Made by a program: the position numbers and the translations under genes. From assembly GCF_001194135.2 (NCBI RefSeq), contig NC_068988.1, forward strand, positions 45,963,668 to 46,027,667: a stretch of DNA of 64,000 nucleotides, in the 5' to 3' direction. Origin of the DNA: Octopus bimaculoides. Taxonomy: Eukaryota. Below, piece after piece: positions 9,335-35,650 of this stretch (the stretch's first letter is position 1; each line of letters opens with the position of its first letter). The notes under the pieces are model-generated. The model did not search any database and was not told where the DNA came from. It saw only the letters and a program-made list of their open reading frames with translations.

Positions 9335-11755
9335 ATGGTACCTGCCTCATATCTTGTCCAACTCCGTGACTTCCTTATTCGAATTTCTTAGAGCTCTCTT
9401 GAACGTATCAACAAAGTGTTCTGCTTGTCCATTAGATCTGGAATGGTACGGCAGGTAGTTAATATTCTATAGCGAAAATTTTACGAAATGTTTTTAACTA
9501 AAAAGACGCAAATTGTGTTCCATTATCAGATACTATAGTATCCTGGATGCCAAATCTCACAAACAGCACATGTAAAAAATTTGCATAATTGCGGAGATTA
9601 ACTTTTTACACTTTCAAATTTCTGACCATTTAGAGAAAATATCTACTACCACTAAGTAGTATAAACCGTTTAAAGGACCACCAAAATCGCTGTGTAGTCT
9701 TGAACACGGAACATCTTTTCACCAAGGTTAACTTTTAATCGTCCGTAATTTTGCTACTAGGGCACATCCTCTACAACCTTTCACCAAATTTTCAATTTCT
9801 CTAGCCATTTTTGACCAGTACATATAGTTACGCATTAAAGCTTTCATCCACGAAATACCAGGATATCCAGCATAGAATTACCTCAACATTTTCTTTTGAA
9901 ATGCTTCAGTATTACTACACTCTGTGCATACATCAGCACACTATAAAAAAAAATTGAGTATAGCTTCACGTCTTCATTTCGTTTTTCACCAATCTTGTTC
10001 CTACTTACTTTTCCTACCAACAGTTTCTTTTCATTTCTTTTAAGAATTTGTCCTTTTCCGCATTTAGTTCTATGTTTTCTAGGGCCACCGGTAATTTGCG
10101 TACATGTTCCACGTTACATTTTTTATTTATTCTTCTGATTTTAATGCTGCGACTACCGTATCTTTGAATGGCTCACAATGTTTTCGTATCAGTCTGGACA
10201 AACCATCCGCATGCCCTAGTTTTTTTACCTAAATATTCCATTTTGAAATCATAATTCAATAACGTAGTGCCCATCGCTGTAATCTCTTAGTTGTGTGTGT
10301 TGGTATTCCTTTTTTAAGAACAATGTATCGACAGTAGTGGATGATGATCCATTTGTTGACAGAAACGTCTTCCATGGATAAATCTAAGGATTTTTTTAAT
10401 ACCGAATATAATTGCTAACGCTTCCTTTTCTATCTGGCTGTAGGCCTTTTCTGCTGGTAATAACAATTATGACACCTTTTTACTCCTATCATCAGATTTG
10501 GGCAGAAGCACTGCTCCTACACCGTAATGACTTGCGTCTGTAGCCAATAAAATATCCAGCTTTGGATCGAAATGCGTTAACGATAAGTTAGACGTCAAAA
10601 TGTTTTTTATTTCGTCAAATGCCTTCTGGCACTTATCAGTCCAGCTCCATTTTGCATTTTTCTTTAACAAATCATTTAGTGTGGCCCTAACATTGTGCAT
10701 ATTGGGAATATAAATTTGGTAGCAATTTACTAACCCCCAAAATGCTTCTAGCACAGTCACATTATTGGGCGTGGACATTTTTTTATCGCAGTTGCTCTGG
10801 GTGGATCTGGTTTCCCTCCGTTTTTATCTATTATCTGTTCCAAGTATTTATTTATATTTTTCAGAAAGAACACGCATTCATCTTCACTTAGCTTTAAGCA
10901 ATATTCTCTTATCTTTTCAGATACCCTTTTTATGTGCGCTACATGTTCGTGTGATTCACTATTTATTAGGCTACCGTCTAAATAGGCGATAGGAAAATCA
11001 CAGTGTGCCAGCATTGTATTCATTACTTGTTGAAATATGAAAGGAGCCACTTTTACACCGAAAAATACGCCCATAAGTGTTTTGTGTGGGAATATAGTCG
11101 GTTCAGTTGAAGGTTTGGATGTGACCGAGGGATTGAAACAAAAACTAAAACGTAATTGCTGTAACGCTCATGTTCTCATGTTACCAGTTTTCTTAGGATT
11201 ATACATGTTTTCATCATCTCAATTTTTGCACTCTTTAATGAAGATCTGCTCGTACCTTCTATAGTATGCCTCGAAGGTAACTCCTTCATCTGGTTCATAC
11301 TTAAATTCCATTGTTGAGTTTGCGACATAATCTGATGAGAAGATCTTTTCAGCATTTTTTTACTAGTTTTCATTAATTGCAACGTTTATTGCTGTAATAG
11401 TAATTGTTGCTGTTGTTGTTCTTACAGTTGTTGTTGTTGTTACTGCTTTTGCAACTCGAGAAAACAGGCAAAAATTCTTCCATAATTTTACGATTTTGTG
11501 TACCGTGAAATTCACACAAAAAACGTTTGTAACTCCTTGTGAGTTTGTTTAATCTGCACGAGTTAGTTGATTCCTCGTGAGTTTGTCAATTTCTCATCGC
11601 TCCTGTTGTAATCCAACGCCGGACTGTTGTAACATCCACTCTGGCATAGCAGTATAGTCAGTTAGACAAGTAAAGACACGACTATCTGTGAATGACTTTG
11701 CCGACTTCTCAACCACTCGACTTCCTACATCGCAGTATTTGTAACGACTATCACA
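9335..11755 (-). mobile_element. Ty3/Gypsy (Mag-like) LTR retrotransposon remnant: putative 5' LTR, gag N-terminus, deletion, then RT, RNase H and integrase
   Basis: RT FGVKVAPFIFQQVMNTML...YLDG; RNase H DASHYGVGAVL and HADGLSRLI; integrase zinc finger GISWMKALMRNYMYW...CRGC and core HSDFGGP..YLVVVDIFSKW, RFGIQDTIVSDNGTQF, PYHSRSNGQAEHFVDTFKRAL; gag FEAYYRRYE. A putative LTR end ...TTACAACA at 11604 is followed by a degenerate PBS (GGAGCGATGAG). Many stops; no 3' LTR seen. Confidence 0.92.
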
Positions 11756-15830: not shown

Positions 15831-16479
15831 CCTTGGCAATGCAGAGATCACACATGCATAGACAAGGTCTTAGCTATTTTGTATATATATATGTATATAT
15901 GTATGTATGTATGTATAAATTTACCATATTATTAAAAAGCAATCTATCTATTTACCTATCTCTGTATCTATCTATACATATATATATGAATATGCACTTA
16001 TAAATATGTATATATATCTGTATATATACACTCACATTTGTACAAACCCATATTAGCACAAGTATTATTAGCTAGGAACCGAAGTAAACATTACATACTC
16101 GAATCTACTTGCAAAGAAATCAAAACAGTATTCGTTTACCTGGATATACAAACGTAAATAAACATACAGGATACTTAGATACATACATTTACACAAAGTA
16201 ACAATGGAAAACACACACACTAATGCCTACTTTTGGAATTTGGAGTGTGAAAACTATTTCAAATTATCTATCTTTCCAAAATGAGTCTGTACAAAACAAA
16301 GCAACTCCATCTAGATCTGTTAGTATTTTCATAATTACAAAATTAAGGACAGCAGAAAATAACTTTGCTATTACTAAATGGAAGAATAAAGATGAGTACA
16401 AATGCATCTTTCTCTCTGCATTAGTTGCATTTTAAAAGCATCTTTTAATGACATGTATCTATATGCTGTTGTGCATTTC

Positions 16480-16548
16480 CACATATATATATATATATAT
16501 GTATGTATATATATATATATATATGTATGTGTGTATATATATATATAT

Positions 16549-16594
<46 letters not shown>

Positions 16595-17177
16595 NNNNNN
16601 NNNNNNNNNNNNNNNNNNNNNNNNNNNNNNNNNNNNNNNNNNNNNNNNNNNNNNNNNNNNNNNNNNNNNNNNNNNNNNNNNNNNNNNNNNNNNNNNNNNN
16701 NNNNNNNNNNNNNNNNNNNNNNNNNNNNNNNNNNNNNNNNNNNNNNNNNNNNNNNNNNNNNNNNNNNNNNNNNNNNNNNNNNNNNNNNNNNNNNNNNNNN
16801 NNNNNNNNNNNNNNNNNNNNNNNNNNNNNNNNNNNNNNNNNNNNNNNNNNNNNNNNNNNNNNNNNNNNNNNNNNNNNNNNNNNNNNNNNNNNNNNNNNNN
16901 NNNNNNNNNNNNNNNNNNNNNNNNNNNNNNNNNNNNNNNNNNNNNNNNNNNNNNNNNNNNNNNNNNNNNNNNNNNNNNNNNNNNNNNNNNNNNNNNNNNN
17001 NNNNNNNNNNNNNNNNNNNNNNNNNNNNNNNNNNNNNNNNNNNNNNNNNNNNNNNNNNNNNNNNNNNNNNNNNNNNNNNNNNNNNNNNNNNNNNNNNNNN
17101 NNNNNNNNNNNNNNNNNNNNNNNNNNNNNNNNNNNNNNNNNNNNNNNNNNNNNNNTATATATATATATATATATATG

Positions 17178-17227
<50 letters not shown>

Positions 17228-17230
17228 CAT
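16480..17230. repeat. (TA)n array with assembly gap (N 16595-17155)
   Basis: Read directly. Similar TA-flanked gaps at 24165-24264, 37685-37843 and 52048-52240; another gap at 31807-32439. Confidence 0.95.
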
Positions 17231-17588
17231 ACATGTATATATAAATATAACCATACATACATATATACTTGTCATACAGACATATGCATGTGTGTATAGA
17301 TGCGTGTGTGTGTGGGGGGGTACATGCTTTTAACAGTATTAGTTATATGTTTATTTATATGAATTGAATTTTAAAGCTAAGGATACACAAATAAATCTGA
17401 AAATATAATTCAAGAATACATGTAAAGCAACAGACATGTTCTTTAATGATTTAGTGATATGTATATTATTTTATATATGTACATATATGTACATATGTAT
17501 GCTTGTGTGCATATATGTATATAACATACACACACATATGCATATACATATATATGTGTGTGTATATGTATAAATCTATCTATCTATC

Positions 17589-17626
<38 letters not shown>

Positions 17627-17896
17627 TAGATATATATATATACACACATATATACATATGTAAATGTGAACATAACTGATAGACTGACAGATAATTCAGT
17701 CAAGAACTCAAGGGAATTGAAATATGAAAGGATTGAGTTAAAAATGATAAAATTAGTAAGAAATGAGATGTAAATGGAGAATGAGAAAAATGAGAAGCGG
17801 AAAACGAGACCACACTTACAGAGACACACATATGCACACACATGCACATATGTATATACACAGACATATATATATGTGTGTGTGTGTATCTATCTA

Positions 17897-17969
<73 letters not shown>

Positions 17970-18542
17970 ATATATATATACACACACACACATATATATT
18001 TACACATATATACATACATATATTTATATATGCATGTATGTATGCACATATTTGTGTGCTAGAGAGGGAGGGGGGAGAAATAGAGAGAGAGAAAGAGAAG
18101 CAAAGAGGTTCCAGAGATAAAAAGTAAAGGCCCTAATGTTAGTGATATAATCTTTTAAAAGTAGGCAGAAAATGTATATAGACAGCTCTTACTGTTAATT
18201 AAAAATTTGCTAGGAATCTTAATGGTATTCCTTTTTTGTTGCTTTTGTCTTTTGCACATGATTTATGTTGCTTATAGTTTAATGTTTTGTATGTATAGAT
18301 GTGTTGTTGTCAAACTGACTAATTTTGGCAATCATATATACTATTATTATGACCACTTAATTTCTGTCGTTTTCAATGATTCAAATGAAGTTTGCAAAAG
18401 TCTTACCAACTCTATTGCCTATAGAAAGTTTCTGTAACTGACTGAATCGATAATGTAGATTCTATTAACTGGCAGGTTGTTAGTTCACATTCCATCAACT
18501 CTGCTGGCTGAAAACATTTCACTCATGCTTTAATGCTGGCTC

Positions 18543-18632
18543 ACTTTAGGAAATCTAGCAATGAACTACATCAAGCCATAGGTATACTGTACACTATAGC
18601 TTGTTGTAGCTCATTGCTAGACATCCTGGAAC
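18543..18632 (-). ncRNA. Candidate pre-miRNA-like hairpin
   Basis: 28-nt arms 18554-18581 and 18594-18621 give 25/28 Watson-Crick pairs; two of the three mismatches become G-U on the minus strand. The loop is 12 nt and the lower stem extends about 10 nt further. The hairpin lies in unique sequence and was not recognised as a conserved miRNA family. Confidence 0.45.
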
Positions 18633-19373
18633 GTCTATAGTGAAACTGGTTTGAAATATAAAATCAATATTTTTTTCATAATCATAAATTCTGATAAGTT
18701 CAGTAATCAGATATGTGTTGAAAGAAGTATTAATAGTCTACAGATTCTATTTTGATTCCTTTTTGATAAAAAATGTAGAGCATGTAGTGACATCATTTTG
18801 AGGGTCTCCAGCATGCATGCGCAGATTTGGAACCTTCTGGAAGTCCTGCCGAAAGGCCCCTGATGTACATGTGCAGAAAATTAGCAGCAGCTGAACTATG
18901 TATCTTGGACTCGAGATGCAGCAGCTAAACTATGCAGACGTGTCCTCAGCAGCTCTCTGTTTGTCTCTGCTACTGACCTGAGATGCTCGATATTTGAACA
19001 GCTCTGTGTAGCTGGAGTTCTGTGAAGAATGGCTTCACAAAGTATGACTTGCTGCTTCCACACCAGACCTGGCTACTGATTGTCCCAAGGTGTAAATCTT
19101 GTACATACAAAATAAAAGGATTGTTTTTATGTTCGGATGTTTTCTTGTTCCAATATTTTTCCTTCTAACATTTATGTAAGGGATTGTGTGGTACCCTTCC
19201 AGTGCCAACCATTTTCCTCTTTGTTCTTTTTGGTGGGGAATGTTTGCATGTATCAGTTTGAAAATCATTGATACAGTGTGTGCAGCTTTATGAGACATAT
19301 GTTCTATCAAACTAACTTGATATATAATGTTATAATGTCACATTAATATGATCTCCAGTGAGATACAAATTTA

Positions 19374-19790
19374 GCTGTGTGGTTGTGTGGTAAGAAGCTT
19401 GCTTTCGAACCACATGGTTCTGGGTTCAGTCCCACAACATGGAACATTGGGCAAGTGACTTCTACTATAGCCTGACCAAAGCTTTGTGAGTGGATTTGGT
19501 AGATGGAAACTGAAAGAAGCCTGTCACATATATATGTATACATAGATGTATGTATATGTGTGCAAGTATGTCTTTGTGTTCATACCCCATCAACACTTGA
19601 CAACCGGTGTTGGTGTGTTAACGTCCCTGTAACCTATTGATTCGGCAAAAGAGACTGATAGAATAAAGTACTAGGTCTTAAAAAATAAGTCCTGGGATCA
19701 ATTTGTTTGGCTAAAACCCCTTAAGGAAGTGCTCCGCATGGCTGCAGTCAAATGACTGAAACAAGTAAAAGAATAAAAGGATAAAAGAAT
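19374..19790 (+). mobile_element. tRNA-derived SINE, family A (Octopus OK/OR-type), full length
   Basis: Head GGTTGTGTGGTAAG...GGGTTCAGTCCC, internal (TA)/(TG) tract and (TAAAAGA)-type tail. Homologous to 28215, 42627, 50825 and 52600. Confidence 0.92.
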
Positions 19791-21196: not shown

Positions 21197-21614
21197 GACA
21201 TATGGTTGAGAGCAATTGGTGTAAAAAATTAGGGGAAAGGATATTATTAAGATGAAAGAAGGATAACAAGTGAAATGGTTCAGAATAAGAAGAAAGGTAA
21301 GTGGTATTAGGGAAAAGCTGGTGAAGCCTGGTTGCAGTTTTCTCAGTTTTGCCAAGGTGGGCAGGTCATCTGTTTATCAATTAGCTTTGCCGTTTCTTTG
21401 TTTTCTTTGTAGATGCAAGGTCTTGAGATCAGCCTTAACAACTCCATATTATATCTTATTTGGTCTTTCTCTTTCACATACTTCATCTTTATTAAGTGAC
21501 CAGCATCTCTTTATACAGCTGTGCCCCATCTTTATTTATTTCATGTCCCTTTAGCATAGTCTTCTATTTTGTAAACCATATATGATTCCTCTTGTGCTAA
21601 GTTTTTCTCTCTAC

Positions 21615-22350
21615 AAATTTGTACTTTATTTACATTAGTTACATTTGACGGATATTTTTCCTCATCATGTAAATGGTTGTAATGGATCCTCTCATGGACG
21701 AGGGCATGTCCTGCCATTTCTGCTACTCTTCTAGCTTTATATGAATCCACTGGTGTCATTATATTCAAGCCAGGTGGCATTAGCTTTGAGTCTCTACATC
21801 TACACAAGAAAGTTAGATGGTTTGAAAGACGAGCTAGTTTTTGGATGGAGCTTCTATATGTCTCCATTGAAGTGTAATGTTGGCTCTGTACTGCTTAGAC
21901 AATACAGTTCAATATTTAAGAAATGAGGAATTATGTACATATTTAAGAGATGGGGGAAAAATATCCATCAAATGTAAATAATGAAAATAATGTACATAAT
22001 TCCTCATCTCTTAAATATAGAACTGTATTATCTAATCGGTACGGAGTCAACATTAGACTTCAATGGAGACATATAGAGAAACTCCATCAAAAGCTGGCTC
22101 ATCTTTCAAACCATCTAACTTCCTTGTGTAGATGTAGTGACTCAAAGCTAATACCACCTGGCTTGGATATAATGACACCAGTGGATTCATATAAAGCTAG
22201 AAGAGTAGTGGAAAGGACAGGACATGCCCTTGTCCATGAGAGGATCCATTACAACCATTTACAAGATGTGGAAAAATATCCGTCAAATGTAAATAATGTA
22301 CATAATTCCTCATCTATTAAATATAGAACTGTATTAAATTTGTACTTTAT
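21615..22350. mobile_element. Penelope-derived insertion of two inverted copies of (terminal repeat + ORF N-terminus), flanked by a 15-bp TSD
   Basis: Arms about 21631-21940 (-) and 21990-22300 (+) both encode KLA.LSNHLT.LCRC.DSKL.PPGL.IMTPVDSYKARRV...GHALVHERIH, a PLE N-terminal motif. AAATTTGTACTTTAT occurs exactly at 21615-21629 and 22336-22350. Confidence 0.85.
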
Positions 22351-22384
22351 CATTCATGCACACTTATATTACATATACAGTGAA

Positions 22385-22745
22385 TCATACTAGCATCATT
22401 TCTTGCTAGTCTTCACAAGTTCTTTGCATTCAAGACTCATGGTTCACTACCATGCAACCTCATACTTCTAACGTTTGTGGTATAAAATCTGCCATTCACT
22501 CTGAAGGAAAATACATTTATTGCCAGCTGTGCAAGTAAACCCCTGCACTTTTTTCAACCAATTCTTTCCTTTGTTTTTATAATTTTGGAGCTACTATCTC
22601 CCCTACTTATTACATCCCTTAAGTAACAAAAGCTATCAACTATTTCTGGTGAAATATCCAAGCAGTGCAGAAAATTTATCTCTAGTGTGTTCATAGCACA
22701 TATCAAATCATTAAAATCTTGACACCATGAGATTAAACACAATTA
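22385..22745 (-). mobile_element. RTE LINE RT C-terminal fragment
   Basis: EIVDSFCYLRDVIS...RIG...FRVNGRFY...VRSMRLHGSEP*...RLARNDASM matches the RTE-type ...FCYLGD...HGSETW...RNEASM motifs. Confidence 0.8.
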
Positions 22746-35310: not shown

Positions 35311-35650
35311 TATATATTAGAAAAAATAATAAGGTACTCAGATATCTGGATGGTTGTACATTTACAGATTTTTATTAATATGTCACATGTTTTTATAAAT
35401 CATATATTGNNNNNNNNNNTGGTTGTACATTTACAGATTTTTATTAATATGTCACATGTTTTTATAAATCATATATTGGTGCTTGCATCTACTCTAATAG
35501 ATTCTTCAGATTTAAAATCTGAGGAATCTATTAGAGTAGATGAAAGCACTGATATATGATTTATAAAAACATGTGACATATTAATAAAAATCTGTAAATG
35601 TACAACTATCCAGATCTTTGAGTACCTTATTATTCTTTTTCTAATATATA
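35311..35650. mobile_element. Foldback or MITE-like near-perfect palindrome with about 130-bp arms and a 1-nt spacer
   Basis: Centre CAGATTT-A-AAATCTG at 35514. The arms pair out to TA-rich flanks. It contains a 10-N gap (35410-35419) with a duplicated 59-bp flank. Confidence 0.8.

What the first reader, a model, noticed from the sequence alone, without database searches (positions are those of the whole stretch)
18543..18632. Pre-miRNA-like hairpin in unique sequence
Seen: 28-nt arms with 25 Watson-Crick pairs and a 12-nt loop. Two of three mismatches (A-C, C-A) become G-U on the minus strand, which hints at selection on an RNA from that strand. On the minus strand the loop begins at a GUG/UGU junction, the lower stem continues about 10 nt, and a CNNC (CAGC) lies roughly 17-19 nt past the likely 3p end. 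Established: UGU/GUG and CNNC are Microprocessor motifs, and coleoid cephalopods have a large lineage-specific miRNA expansion. Inference: candidate novel miRNA; I do not recognise it as a conserved family.
Basis: partly seen in the sequence, partly recalled or inferred. Interest (0 to 1): 0.7.

Follow-up and report, generated by a model that had tools for sequence, protein, structure and literature searches.

The report
Single-copy miRNA-like hairpin, evolving neutrally
A real, unusually stable, single-copy DNA palindrome has the shape of a microRNA precursor, but it mutates as fast as its surroundings in two related species and shows no sign of transcription, so it is most likely an ordinary neutral inverted repeat rather than a gene.

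Summary
The hairpin exists as described. The arms are 18548-18581 and 18594-18627: 34 nt, 29 Watson-Crick pairs, plus 3 G-U pairs on the minus strand, with a 12-nt loop. It folds far better than its shuffles (z = -6.8 on the plus strand, -8.6 on the minus strand). It is the second-best non-repetitive hairpin in the window and is single-copy in whole-genome runs.

The miRNA reading gained no support from any test I could run:
- No Rfam family reaches its threshold.
- No indexed RNA run holds the hairpin's words.
- Three RNA-seq runs gave zero reads over 18250-19069.
- The stem changes at 6.3% against 4.2-4.9% in the flanks in the orthologous loci of two related species.
- There are no compensatory changes, and four pairs are broken in at least one species.
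- The G-U strand bias is not significant, and one relative's change favours the opposite strand.
- CNNC and apical GUGU are present on the minus strand, each about 10% likely by chance. The basal UG is absent.

Small-RNA data, the decisive test, could not be reached because the read tools were withdrawn.

Best reading: an old, neutrally decaying inverted repeat, at most a proto-miRNA. It is not a MITE: there are no other copies and no target-site duplication. Interest is low.

The parts
18548..18581 (.). Left arm of the inverted repeat (5p arm on the plus strand, 3p arm on the minus strand). Positions 18554-18579 are identical in all three species.
18582..18593 (.). 12-nt spacer or loop (plus GUAUACUGUACA, minus UGUACAGUAUAC). 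It is partly self-complementary, so the predicted terminal loop is only 3-5 nt.
   Evidence: (I2)
18594..18627 (.). Right arm of the inverted repeat. It carries most of the between-species changes (18604, 18616, 18620, 18625).
18591..18594 (-). GUGU at the stem-loop junction on the minus strand (an apical UGU/GUG-like motif). About 10% expected by chance.
18535..18538 (-). CAGC (CNNC) downstream of the minus-strand 3p arm. It is at +16 to +18 only if the 5p arm starts at stem positions 9-11. About 10% expected by chance.
18006..18812 (.). Single-copy island holding the hairpin: one 807-nt unitig, whose ends I inferred from the contig coordinates. It lies between a TA/TG microsatellite and repeated DNA that starts at about 18783.

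Best explanation
This is a single-copy, fairly old inverted repeat: an 80-nt near-palindrome in repeat-rich, apparently untranscribed non-coding DNA. It was most likely created by a local inverted duplication such as a replication template switch. It has since been decaying by ordinary point mutation under no detectable constraint. If it were ever transcribed it would fold into a pre-miRNA-shaped hairpin, so it is raw material for a miRNA (a 'proto-miRNA'), but nothing indicates that it is a working miRNA gene.

Shown: the hairpin, its uniqueness, its presence at the orthologous locus in two related species, its flank-like substitution rate, the pair-breaking changes, and the absence of RNA-seq signal.

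Inferred: the template-switch origin, the age, and the lack of function.
For: - Structure and uniqueness.
- The orthologous contigs of organisms B and C are about 5% diverged over 551 nt (28 and 25 substitutions). Both still carry the hairpin, but weaker: core minus-strand MFE is -50.9 in A, -37.3 in B and -34.7 in C.
- Substitution density is 5/80 in the hairpin against 23/471 (B) and 20/471 (C) in the flanks.
- Of the 34 stem pairs, 27 are invariant, none shows a compensatory change, one switches between GC and GU, four are broken in at least one species and two are never paired.
- The flanks contain longer invariant runs (66, 64 and 47 nt) than the hairpin's longest (26 nt).
- RNA: no RNA run holds any sampled word of the hairpin. 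Depth is zero over 18250-19069 in three RNA-seq runs of about 12 million records each, while the neighbouring repeat at 19398-19438 is read at about 40-54x per orientation.
- No Rfam family reaches its gathering score anywhere in the window.
- Base rate: template switching produced more than 6,000 suitable hairpins in primates, of which 18 became miRNA genes (PMC10710096). Other large palindromes occur in this same window.
- My inference on age: 5 non-Watson-Crick pairs of 34 in A implies about 7% per-site decay from a perfect palindrome, which is more than the 5% A-B distance. That fits an origin before the species split.
Against: - The stem length (34 bp plus a weak extension), the 12-nt spacer, the minus-strand CNNC at the right distance and the apical GUGU are what Microprocessor prefers. 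Having both motifs on one strand is roughly a 1-in-100 coincidence per strand and cut register, before allowing for two strands and several registers.
- The arm 18554-18579 is invariant in all three species.
- Organism A's version pairs better than those of B and C, which could reflect improvement in that lineage.
- Small RNA libraries were never examined. The poly-A type RNA-seq was only about 6% sampled and of unknown tissue, so weak or tissue-specific expression is not excluded.
Confidence: 0.65

Rival explanations
1. A young, lineage-restricted canonical miRNA gene transcribed from the minus strand. Drosha would cut about 9-12 bp above the base of the 34-bp stem and Dicer would cut near the loop. 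Plausible products are UAGCAAUGAGCUACAACAAGCU (5p) and GCUUGAUGUAGUUCAUUGCUAG or a neighbouring register (3p).
For: - The geometry fits a pri-miRNA: a stem of about 35 bp, a 12-nt spacer, and a strong fold with z = -8.6.
- The minus strand gains 3 G-U pairs, giving 32 of 34 paired.
- CNNC lies at +16 to +18 and GUGU at the apical junction.
- It is single-copy and present at the orthologous locus in two related species.
- The candidate 3p arm (minus strand) 18554-18579 is invariant across the three species.
- The octopus miRNA survey states that its catalogue is an underestimate and excludes species-specific miRNAs (PMC9699675).
Against: - There is no excess conservation, no compensatory change and four pairs are broken.
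- The candidate 5p arm carries changes, including one at its 5' end (18616).
- 18625 C>T in the relatives favours the plus strand.
- There is no basal UG.
- The predicted terminal loop is only 3-5 nt.
- There is no pri-miRNA signal in RNA-seq or in the RNA index.
- Neither Rfam nor the literature holds a match.
- None of 12 candidate seed sites is listed as an annotated octopus seed, and one is explicitly a 'Non-seed kmer' (the files are truncated).
- The prior is low: such hairpins vastly outnumber miRNA genes.
Confidence: 0.2
2. A relic of a mobile element, either a very short MITE or foldback element or an internal palindrome of an old transposon, whose other copies have diverged beyond recognition.
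For: The region is repeat-rich. Reverse transcriptase and RNase H fragments lie at 10467-11074. An extremely abundant SINE-like repeat lies about 750 nt downstream at 19357-19438. Other inverted TE-like duplications lie at 21853-22077.
Against: - The hairpin is single-copy at 80% likeness or better in the contigs of three DNA-like runs (X1, X3, X4).
- A sensitive blastn finds no diverged copy in the window.
- No consistent target-site duplication flanks the repeat.
- The arm consensus has no exact match in metagenome contigs.
- At 80 nt it is shorter than typical MITEs.
Confidence: 0.1
3. The palindrome works in some other way: as a DNA-level palindromic binding site or cruciform, or as a double-stranded RNA substrate (for example for ADAR) inside an unannotated transcript.
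For: Only the strength of the palindrome itself.
Against: There are no reads on either strand, substitution is flank-like with pair-breaking changes, and there is no nearby coding exon.
Confidence: 0.05

Closest known systems
Canonical animal pri-/pre-miRNA hairpins (MirGeneDB criteria; Microprocessor motifs of Auyeung 2013 and Fang & Bartel 2015, cited from my own knowledge)
   Same: A stem of about 35 bp, more than 16 paired nt between the arms, a 12-nt spacer, CNNC downstream and UGU/GUG at the apical junction on the minus strand, and a strongly negative folding z-score.
   Different: There is no read evidence, no basal UG, an almost bulge-free duplex and a small predicted terminal loop. 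There is no excess conservation, no Rfam family and no detectable primary transcript.
Hairpins generated by template-switching mutations, the raw material of de novo miRNAs (Monttinen, Frilander & Loytynoja 2023, PMC10710096)
   Same: A short, near-perfect inverted repeat in unique sequence that instantly has pre-miRNA geometry. Most such hairpins never become genes because they lack a promoter.
   Different: The creating event cannot be reconstructed here, because the hairpin was already present in the common ancestor of the three species available.
MITE-derived miRNA-like hairpins
   Same: An inverted repeat that folds into a long, nearly perfect stem.
   Different: Single-copy, no target-site duplication, no family.
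Sub-threshold Rfam hairpin hits (MIR1222 39.6 bits against a gathering score of 90; mir-6536 34.0 against 100)
   Same: Generic hairpin shape.
   Different: The scores are far below gathering, and the families come from unrelated taxa. The hits reflect structure only.

Membership tests
Canonical animal miRNA gene | Hairpin with at least 16 complementary nucleotides between the two arms | tested here: met
   29 Watson-Crick pairs of 34, plus 3 G-U on the minus strand
Canonical animal miRNA gene | Stem of about 35 bp flanked by single-stranded segments, with an unstructured apical loop of 8-10 nt or more | tested here: inconclusive
   The stem is 34 bp with a weak extension and the spacer is 12 nt. 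The spacer is self-complementary, so the MFE terminal loop is 3-5 nt.
Canonical animal miRNA gene | Reads of 20-26 nt from both arms, with 2-nt 3' overhangs and homogeneous 5' ends | not testable with these tools
Canonical animal miRNA gene | A primary transcript covering the hairpin | tested here: not met
   No RNA run in the index holds its words. Depth is zero in X19-X21 over 18250-19069. Only about 6% of each run was read and the tissues are unknown.
Canonical animal miRNA gene | Mature arms and stem conserved above background in related species, with changes compensated | tested here: not met
   6.3% in the hairpin against 4.2-4.9% in the flanks. No compensatory change, and four pairs broken.
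Canonical animal miRNA gene | Microprocessor motifs (basal UG, apical UGU/GUG, CNNC at +16 to +18) | tested here: inconclusive
   The minus strand has CNNC and GUGU but no basal UG. The plus strand has no basal UG and no junction UGU/GUG, and reaches CNNC at +16 in only one of six cut registers. Each motif is about 0.1 likely by chance.
Known miRNA family (Rfam 15; annotated octopus seeds) | A score at or above a family's gathering threshold, or a shared seed with an annotated miRNA | tested here: not met
   No gathering-level hit. None of 12 candidate seed sites is listed as an annotated seed in the truncated supplements. MirGeneDB itself could not be searched.
MITE or foldback transposon | Many dispersed copies | tested here: not met
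   Single unitig at unique depth, with no other contig at 80% or better. No copy in the window.
MITE or foldback transposon | Target-site duplication flanking the terminal inverted repeats | tested here: not met
   Only inconsistent 4-nt coincidences among 256 boundary combinations.
Template-switch-generated hairpin | A cluster of changes on one branch that copies one arm from the other in a single event | not testable with these tools
   The hairpin predates the split of the three species, and no outgroup is available.

The most novel reading that the evidence does not exclude
The hairpin is a genus-level, recently born miRNA caught early in its life. It would be made from the minus strand, still evolving almost neutrally, with organism A's lineage having tightened the stem (pairs at 18616 and 18625). 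It would be expressed too weakly or too tissue-specifically to appear in the RNA data examined, and it would have been excluded from curated catalogues by their two-species rule.
Probability: 0.15. Interest if true: 0.4.

Novelty: new member of a known kind. Interest (0 to 1): 0.15.

Why it matters
If it were a working miRNA, it would add one lineage-restricted gene to an already documented cephalopod miRNA expansion. That would be a modest increment and a possible example of miRNA birth from a palindrome.

As it stands, it mainly illustrates why hairpin geometry and Microprocessor motifs alone are weak evidence. Genomes hold far more miRNA-shaped palindromes than miRNA genes, and a simple comparison of stem and flank substitution rates in congeners already tells them apart.

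Tried and rejected
- **Rfam.** The permissive search gave only generic sub-threshold hairpin hits. It also gave spurious mir-297 and mir-3149 hits on the TA/TG microsatellites. I rejected these as low-complexity artefacts.
- **Literature.** Full-text searches for 10- to 12-mers of the arms found only unrelated primers. The supplements of the octopus miRNA paper and its preprint hold no full miRNA sequences, and no supplementary text is held for MirGeneDB 3.0. The seed-site look-ups were negative but the files are truncated.
- **Public contigs.** The metagenome scan for the arm consensus found nothing.
- **Host organism.** I tried to identify the host through the reverse-transcriptase ORF, through the abundant repeat in the literature and with ARAGORN. 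None was informative, so the cephalopod premise stays unverified. From memory only, the downstream SINE-like repeat resembles an abundant octopus repeat.
- **MITE hypothesis.** Rejected: single copy and no target-site duplication.
- **G-U strand bias as evidence of selection.** Rejected: two-sided chance 0.25, and contradicted by 18625 C>T in the relatives.

Full report
**1. The observation**

The sequence at 18543-18632 contains an inverted repeat with arms 18548-18581 and 18594-18627. The arms are 34 nt and 85% complementary, with 12 nt between them.

Their three mismatches are A-C at 18565/18610, T-T at 18571/18604 and C-A at 18577/18598.
- The outer six positions add four pairs, an A-A and another A-C (18553/18622).
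- All three A-C-type mismatches become G-U on the minus strand. That strand therefore has 32 of 34 positions paired.
- A 130-nt stretch folds at -49.1 kcal/mol on the plus strand (z = -6.8) and -54.5 on the minus strand (z = -8.6). None of 200 dinucleotide shuffles folds as well on either strand.
- I folded every 100-nt window of the 64-kb sequence on both strands. Outside low-complexity DNA the mean is -16.5 ± 6.0 kcal/mol. The candidate, at -51.4, is second only to a long palindrome at 35422-35606.

**2. Uniqueness**

- The arm sequence occurs nowhere else in the window, even with three mismatches or by short-word blastn.
- In DNA-like runs of the same organism (X1, X3, X4) the locus lies on one 807-nt unitig at single-copy word depth (15.2, 7.9 and 10).
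- At a likeness threshold of 80%, no other contig of X1 or X4 lies on 18307-18648; at 95% X3 shows single-copy depth there. Repeated DNA begins only at about 18783.
- No consistent target-site duplication flanks the repeat.
- A scan of metagenome contigs for the arm consensus found nothing.

The MITE reading is rejected at the sensitivity available.

**3. Known families**

- No Rfam 15 family reaches its gathering score anywhere in the window.
- With permissive thresholds the hairpin gives only generic hairpin hits, such as MIR1222 at 39.6 bits against a gathering score of 90.
- The neighbouring TA/TG microsatellites give spurious mir-297 and mir-3149 hits.
- Full-text searches for arm 10- to 12-mers found only unrelated primers.
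- The octopus miRNA survey (PMC9699675) does not hold precursor sequences in the files available.
- None of twelve seed-site 8-mers for plausible mature products is listed there as an annotated seed. One, CATCAAGA, is explicitly a 'Non-seed kmer'. The files are truncated, so this is a weak negative.

**4. Transcription**

- A word-index search of RNA runs for the 130-nt hairpin returned no RNA run holding any sampled word. The only holder, X3, behaves like DNA.
- Three 2026 RNA-seq runs of the same species were examined, about 12 million records each, roughly 6% of each run. They give zero depth on either orientation from 18250 to 19069. The abundant repeat at 19398-19438 is read at about 40-54x per orientation.
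- This argues against an appreciable primary transcript or an expressed host intron in those samples. It says nothing about 22-nt products.
- Small-RNA libraries could not be reached, because both read tools were withdrawn for this window and I did not try to get round that.

**5. Comparative test**

Two other organisms (B in run X14, C in run X15) carry the orthologous locus on single contigs. Over 551 nt they differ from the window by 28 and 25 substitutions plus a few indels, about 5%. They differ from each other at about ten sites, so I infer they are sisters relative to A.

The stem changes are:

| Position | Change | Species | Effect on pairing |
|---|---|---|---|
| 18553 | A>G | B, C | turns the A-C into G-C |
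| 18580 | A>T | B | breaks a pair |
| 18604 | T>C | B, C | falls at the T-T mismatch |
| 18616 | G>T | B, C | breaks a C-G pair |
| 18620 | G>T | C | breaks a pair |
| 18625 | C>T | B, C | G-U on the plus strand, C-A on the minus strand |

- Substitution density is 5/80 (6.3%) in the hairpin. In the flanks it is 23/471 (4.9%) for B and 20/471 (4.2%) for C. Fisher p is 0.58 and 0.39.
- A formal count on the three-species alignment covers 34 pairs. Of these, 27 are invariant, none shows a compensatory change, one switches between GC and GU, four are broken in at least one species and two are never paired.
- Two changes can be polarised because B and C disagree and one of them matches A: 18580 and 18620. 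Both destroy Watson-Crick pairs.
- The rebuilt hairpins still fold, but more weakly. The core minus-strand MFE is -50.9 in A, -37.3 in B and -34.7 in C.
- One arm (18554-18579) is invariant in all three species. At a 5% divergence that has a chance of about one in four, and the flanks contain longer invariant runs of 66, 64 and 47 nt.

The hairpin is therefore older than the species split and shows no sign of purifying selection on sequence or structure.

**6. Motifs and the strand argument**

- On the minus strand a CNNC (CAGC, 18538-18535) lies +16 to +18 from the 3p end if the 5p arm begins at stem positions 9-11. GUGU sits at the stem-loop junction.
- There is no basal UG at -14 on either strand. 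The plus strand lacks a junction UGU/GUG and reaches CNNC at +16 in only one of the six cut registers tried.
- In this composition each of the two motifs that are present has about a 0.1 chance of occurring within a 3-nt span. Allowing for two strands and several cut registers, finding both gives moderate support, not strong support.
- Three of three transition mismatches giving G-U on one strand has a two-sided probability of 0.25. The 18625 change in the relatives goes the other way. The hint of selection on a minus-strand RNA is not supported.

**7. Explanation**

The most economical account is a local inverted duplication that happened before these species diverged and has drifted since.

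- Replication template switching is a documented way to create perfect hairpins of exactly this size in one step. In primates it produced more than 6,000 suitable hairpins, of which 18 became miRNA genes (PMC10710096).
- My inference on age: five non-Watson-Crick pairs of 34 in A correspond to about 7% per-site decay from a perfect palindrome. That is somewhat more than the 5% A-B distance, consistent with an origin before the split.
- Base rate: this window alone yields one or two such hairpins per roughly 40 kb of non-repetitive sequence. Extrapolated to a large animal genome, that is orders of magnitude more than the 162-164 miRNA genes reported for octopuses.
- The motifs raise the prior for any one such hairpin being a miRNA gene. 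The neutral substitution pattern and the lack of transcripts lower it again.

My estimates are:

| Reading | Probability |
|---|---|
| Neutral palindrome, at most a proto-miRNA | 0.65 |
| Processed young miRNA | 0.2 |
| TE relic | 0.1 |
| Other function | 0.05 |

**8. Comparison, novelty and verdict**

The hairpin has the shape of a pri-miRNA, but membership in the class fails or is untested on its defining features. Reads were not testable. A transcript was not found. Conservation was not met. A known family was not met.

It is an undescribed instance of a known kind of sequence, a miRNA-shaped inverted repeat. Interest is low unless small-RNA data show precise processing.

The premise that the host is a coleoid cephalopod could not be verified with the tools.

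Noticed in passing
window 35422-35606 (N gap at 35410-35419): The strongest palindrome in the window: 92-nt arms, 96% complementary, 1 nt apart, MFE -63 for 100 nt. It abuts a 10-N assembly gap, and about 30 nt (atgtcacatgtttttataaatcatatattg) is duplicated on both sides of the gap. It may be an assembly artefact or a real foldback.
   Followed up: partly
window 21853-21940 / 21990-22077: Inverted duplication with 88-nt arms (91%) and a 49-nt spacer. Its two sides encode similar peptides in ORFs 21541-21867 (-) and 21950-22393 (+). There is no Pfam match, so it is probably two head-to-head copies of an unclassified repeat.
   Followed up: partly
window 19357-19540: An extremely abundant SINE-like repeat. 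Word depth in DNA-like run X3 reaches about 6.6x10^5, and it is read on both orientations in RNA-seq. It has a B-box-like GGTTCAGTCCC, but ARAGORN calls no tRNA. From memory only, it resembles a very abundant octopus repeat. No literature match was found.
   Followed up: partly
window 10467-11074 (-): Two adjacent ORFs in different reading frames, overlapping by about 20 nt, match reverse transcriptase (PF00078) and the RT-associated RNase H-like domain (PF17919). This is a decayed LTR-type retroelement fragment.
   Followed up: partly
window 17500-18060 and 16374-17330: Long TA/TG microsatellites, one spanning an N gap. They produce many sub-threshold Rfam 'miRNA' hits (mir-297, mir-3149, mir-466 and others) that are low-complexity artefacts.
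   Followed up: yes
window 18783-19233: Moderately repeated DNA immediately downstream of the single-copy island, with word depth of about 15-590 in X3 against about 8 for unique sequence. Its family was not identified.
   Followed up: no
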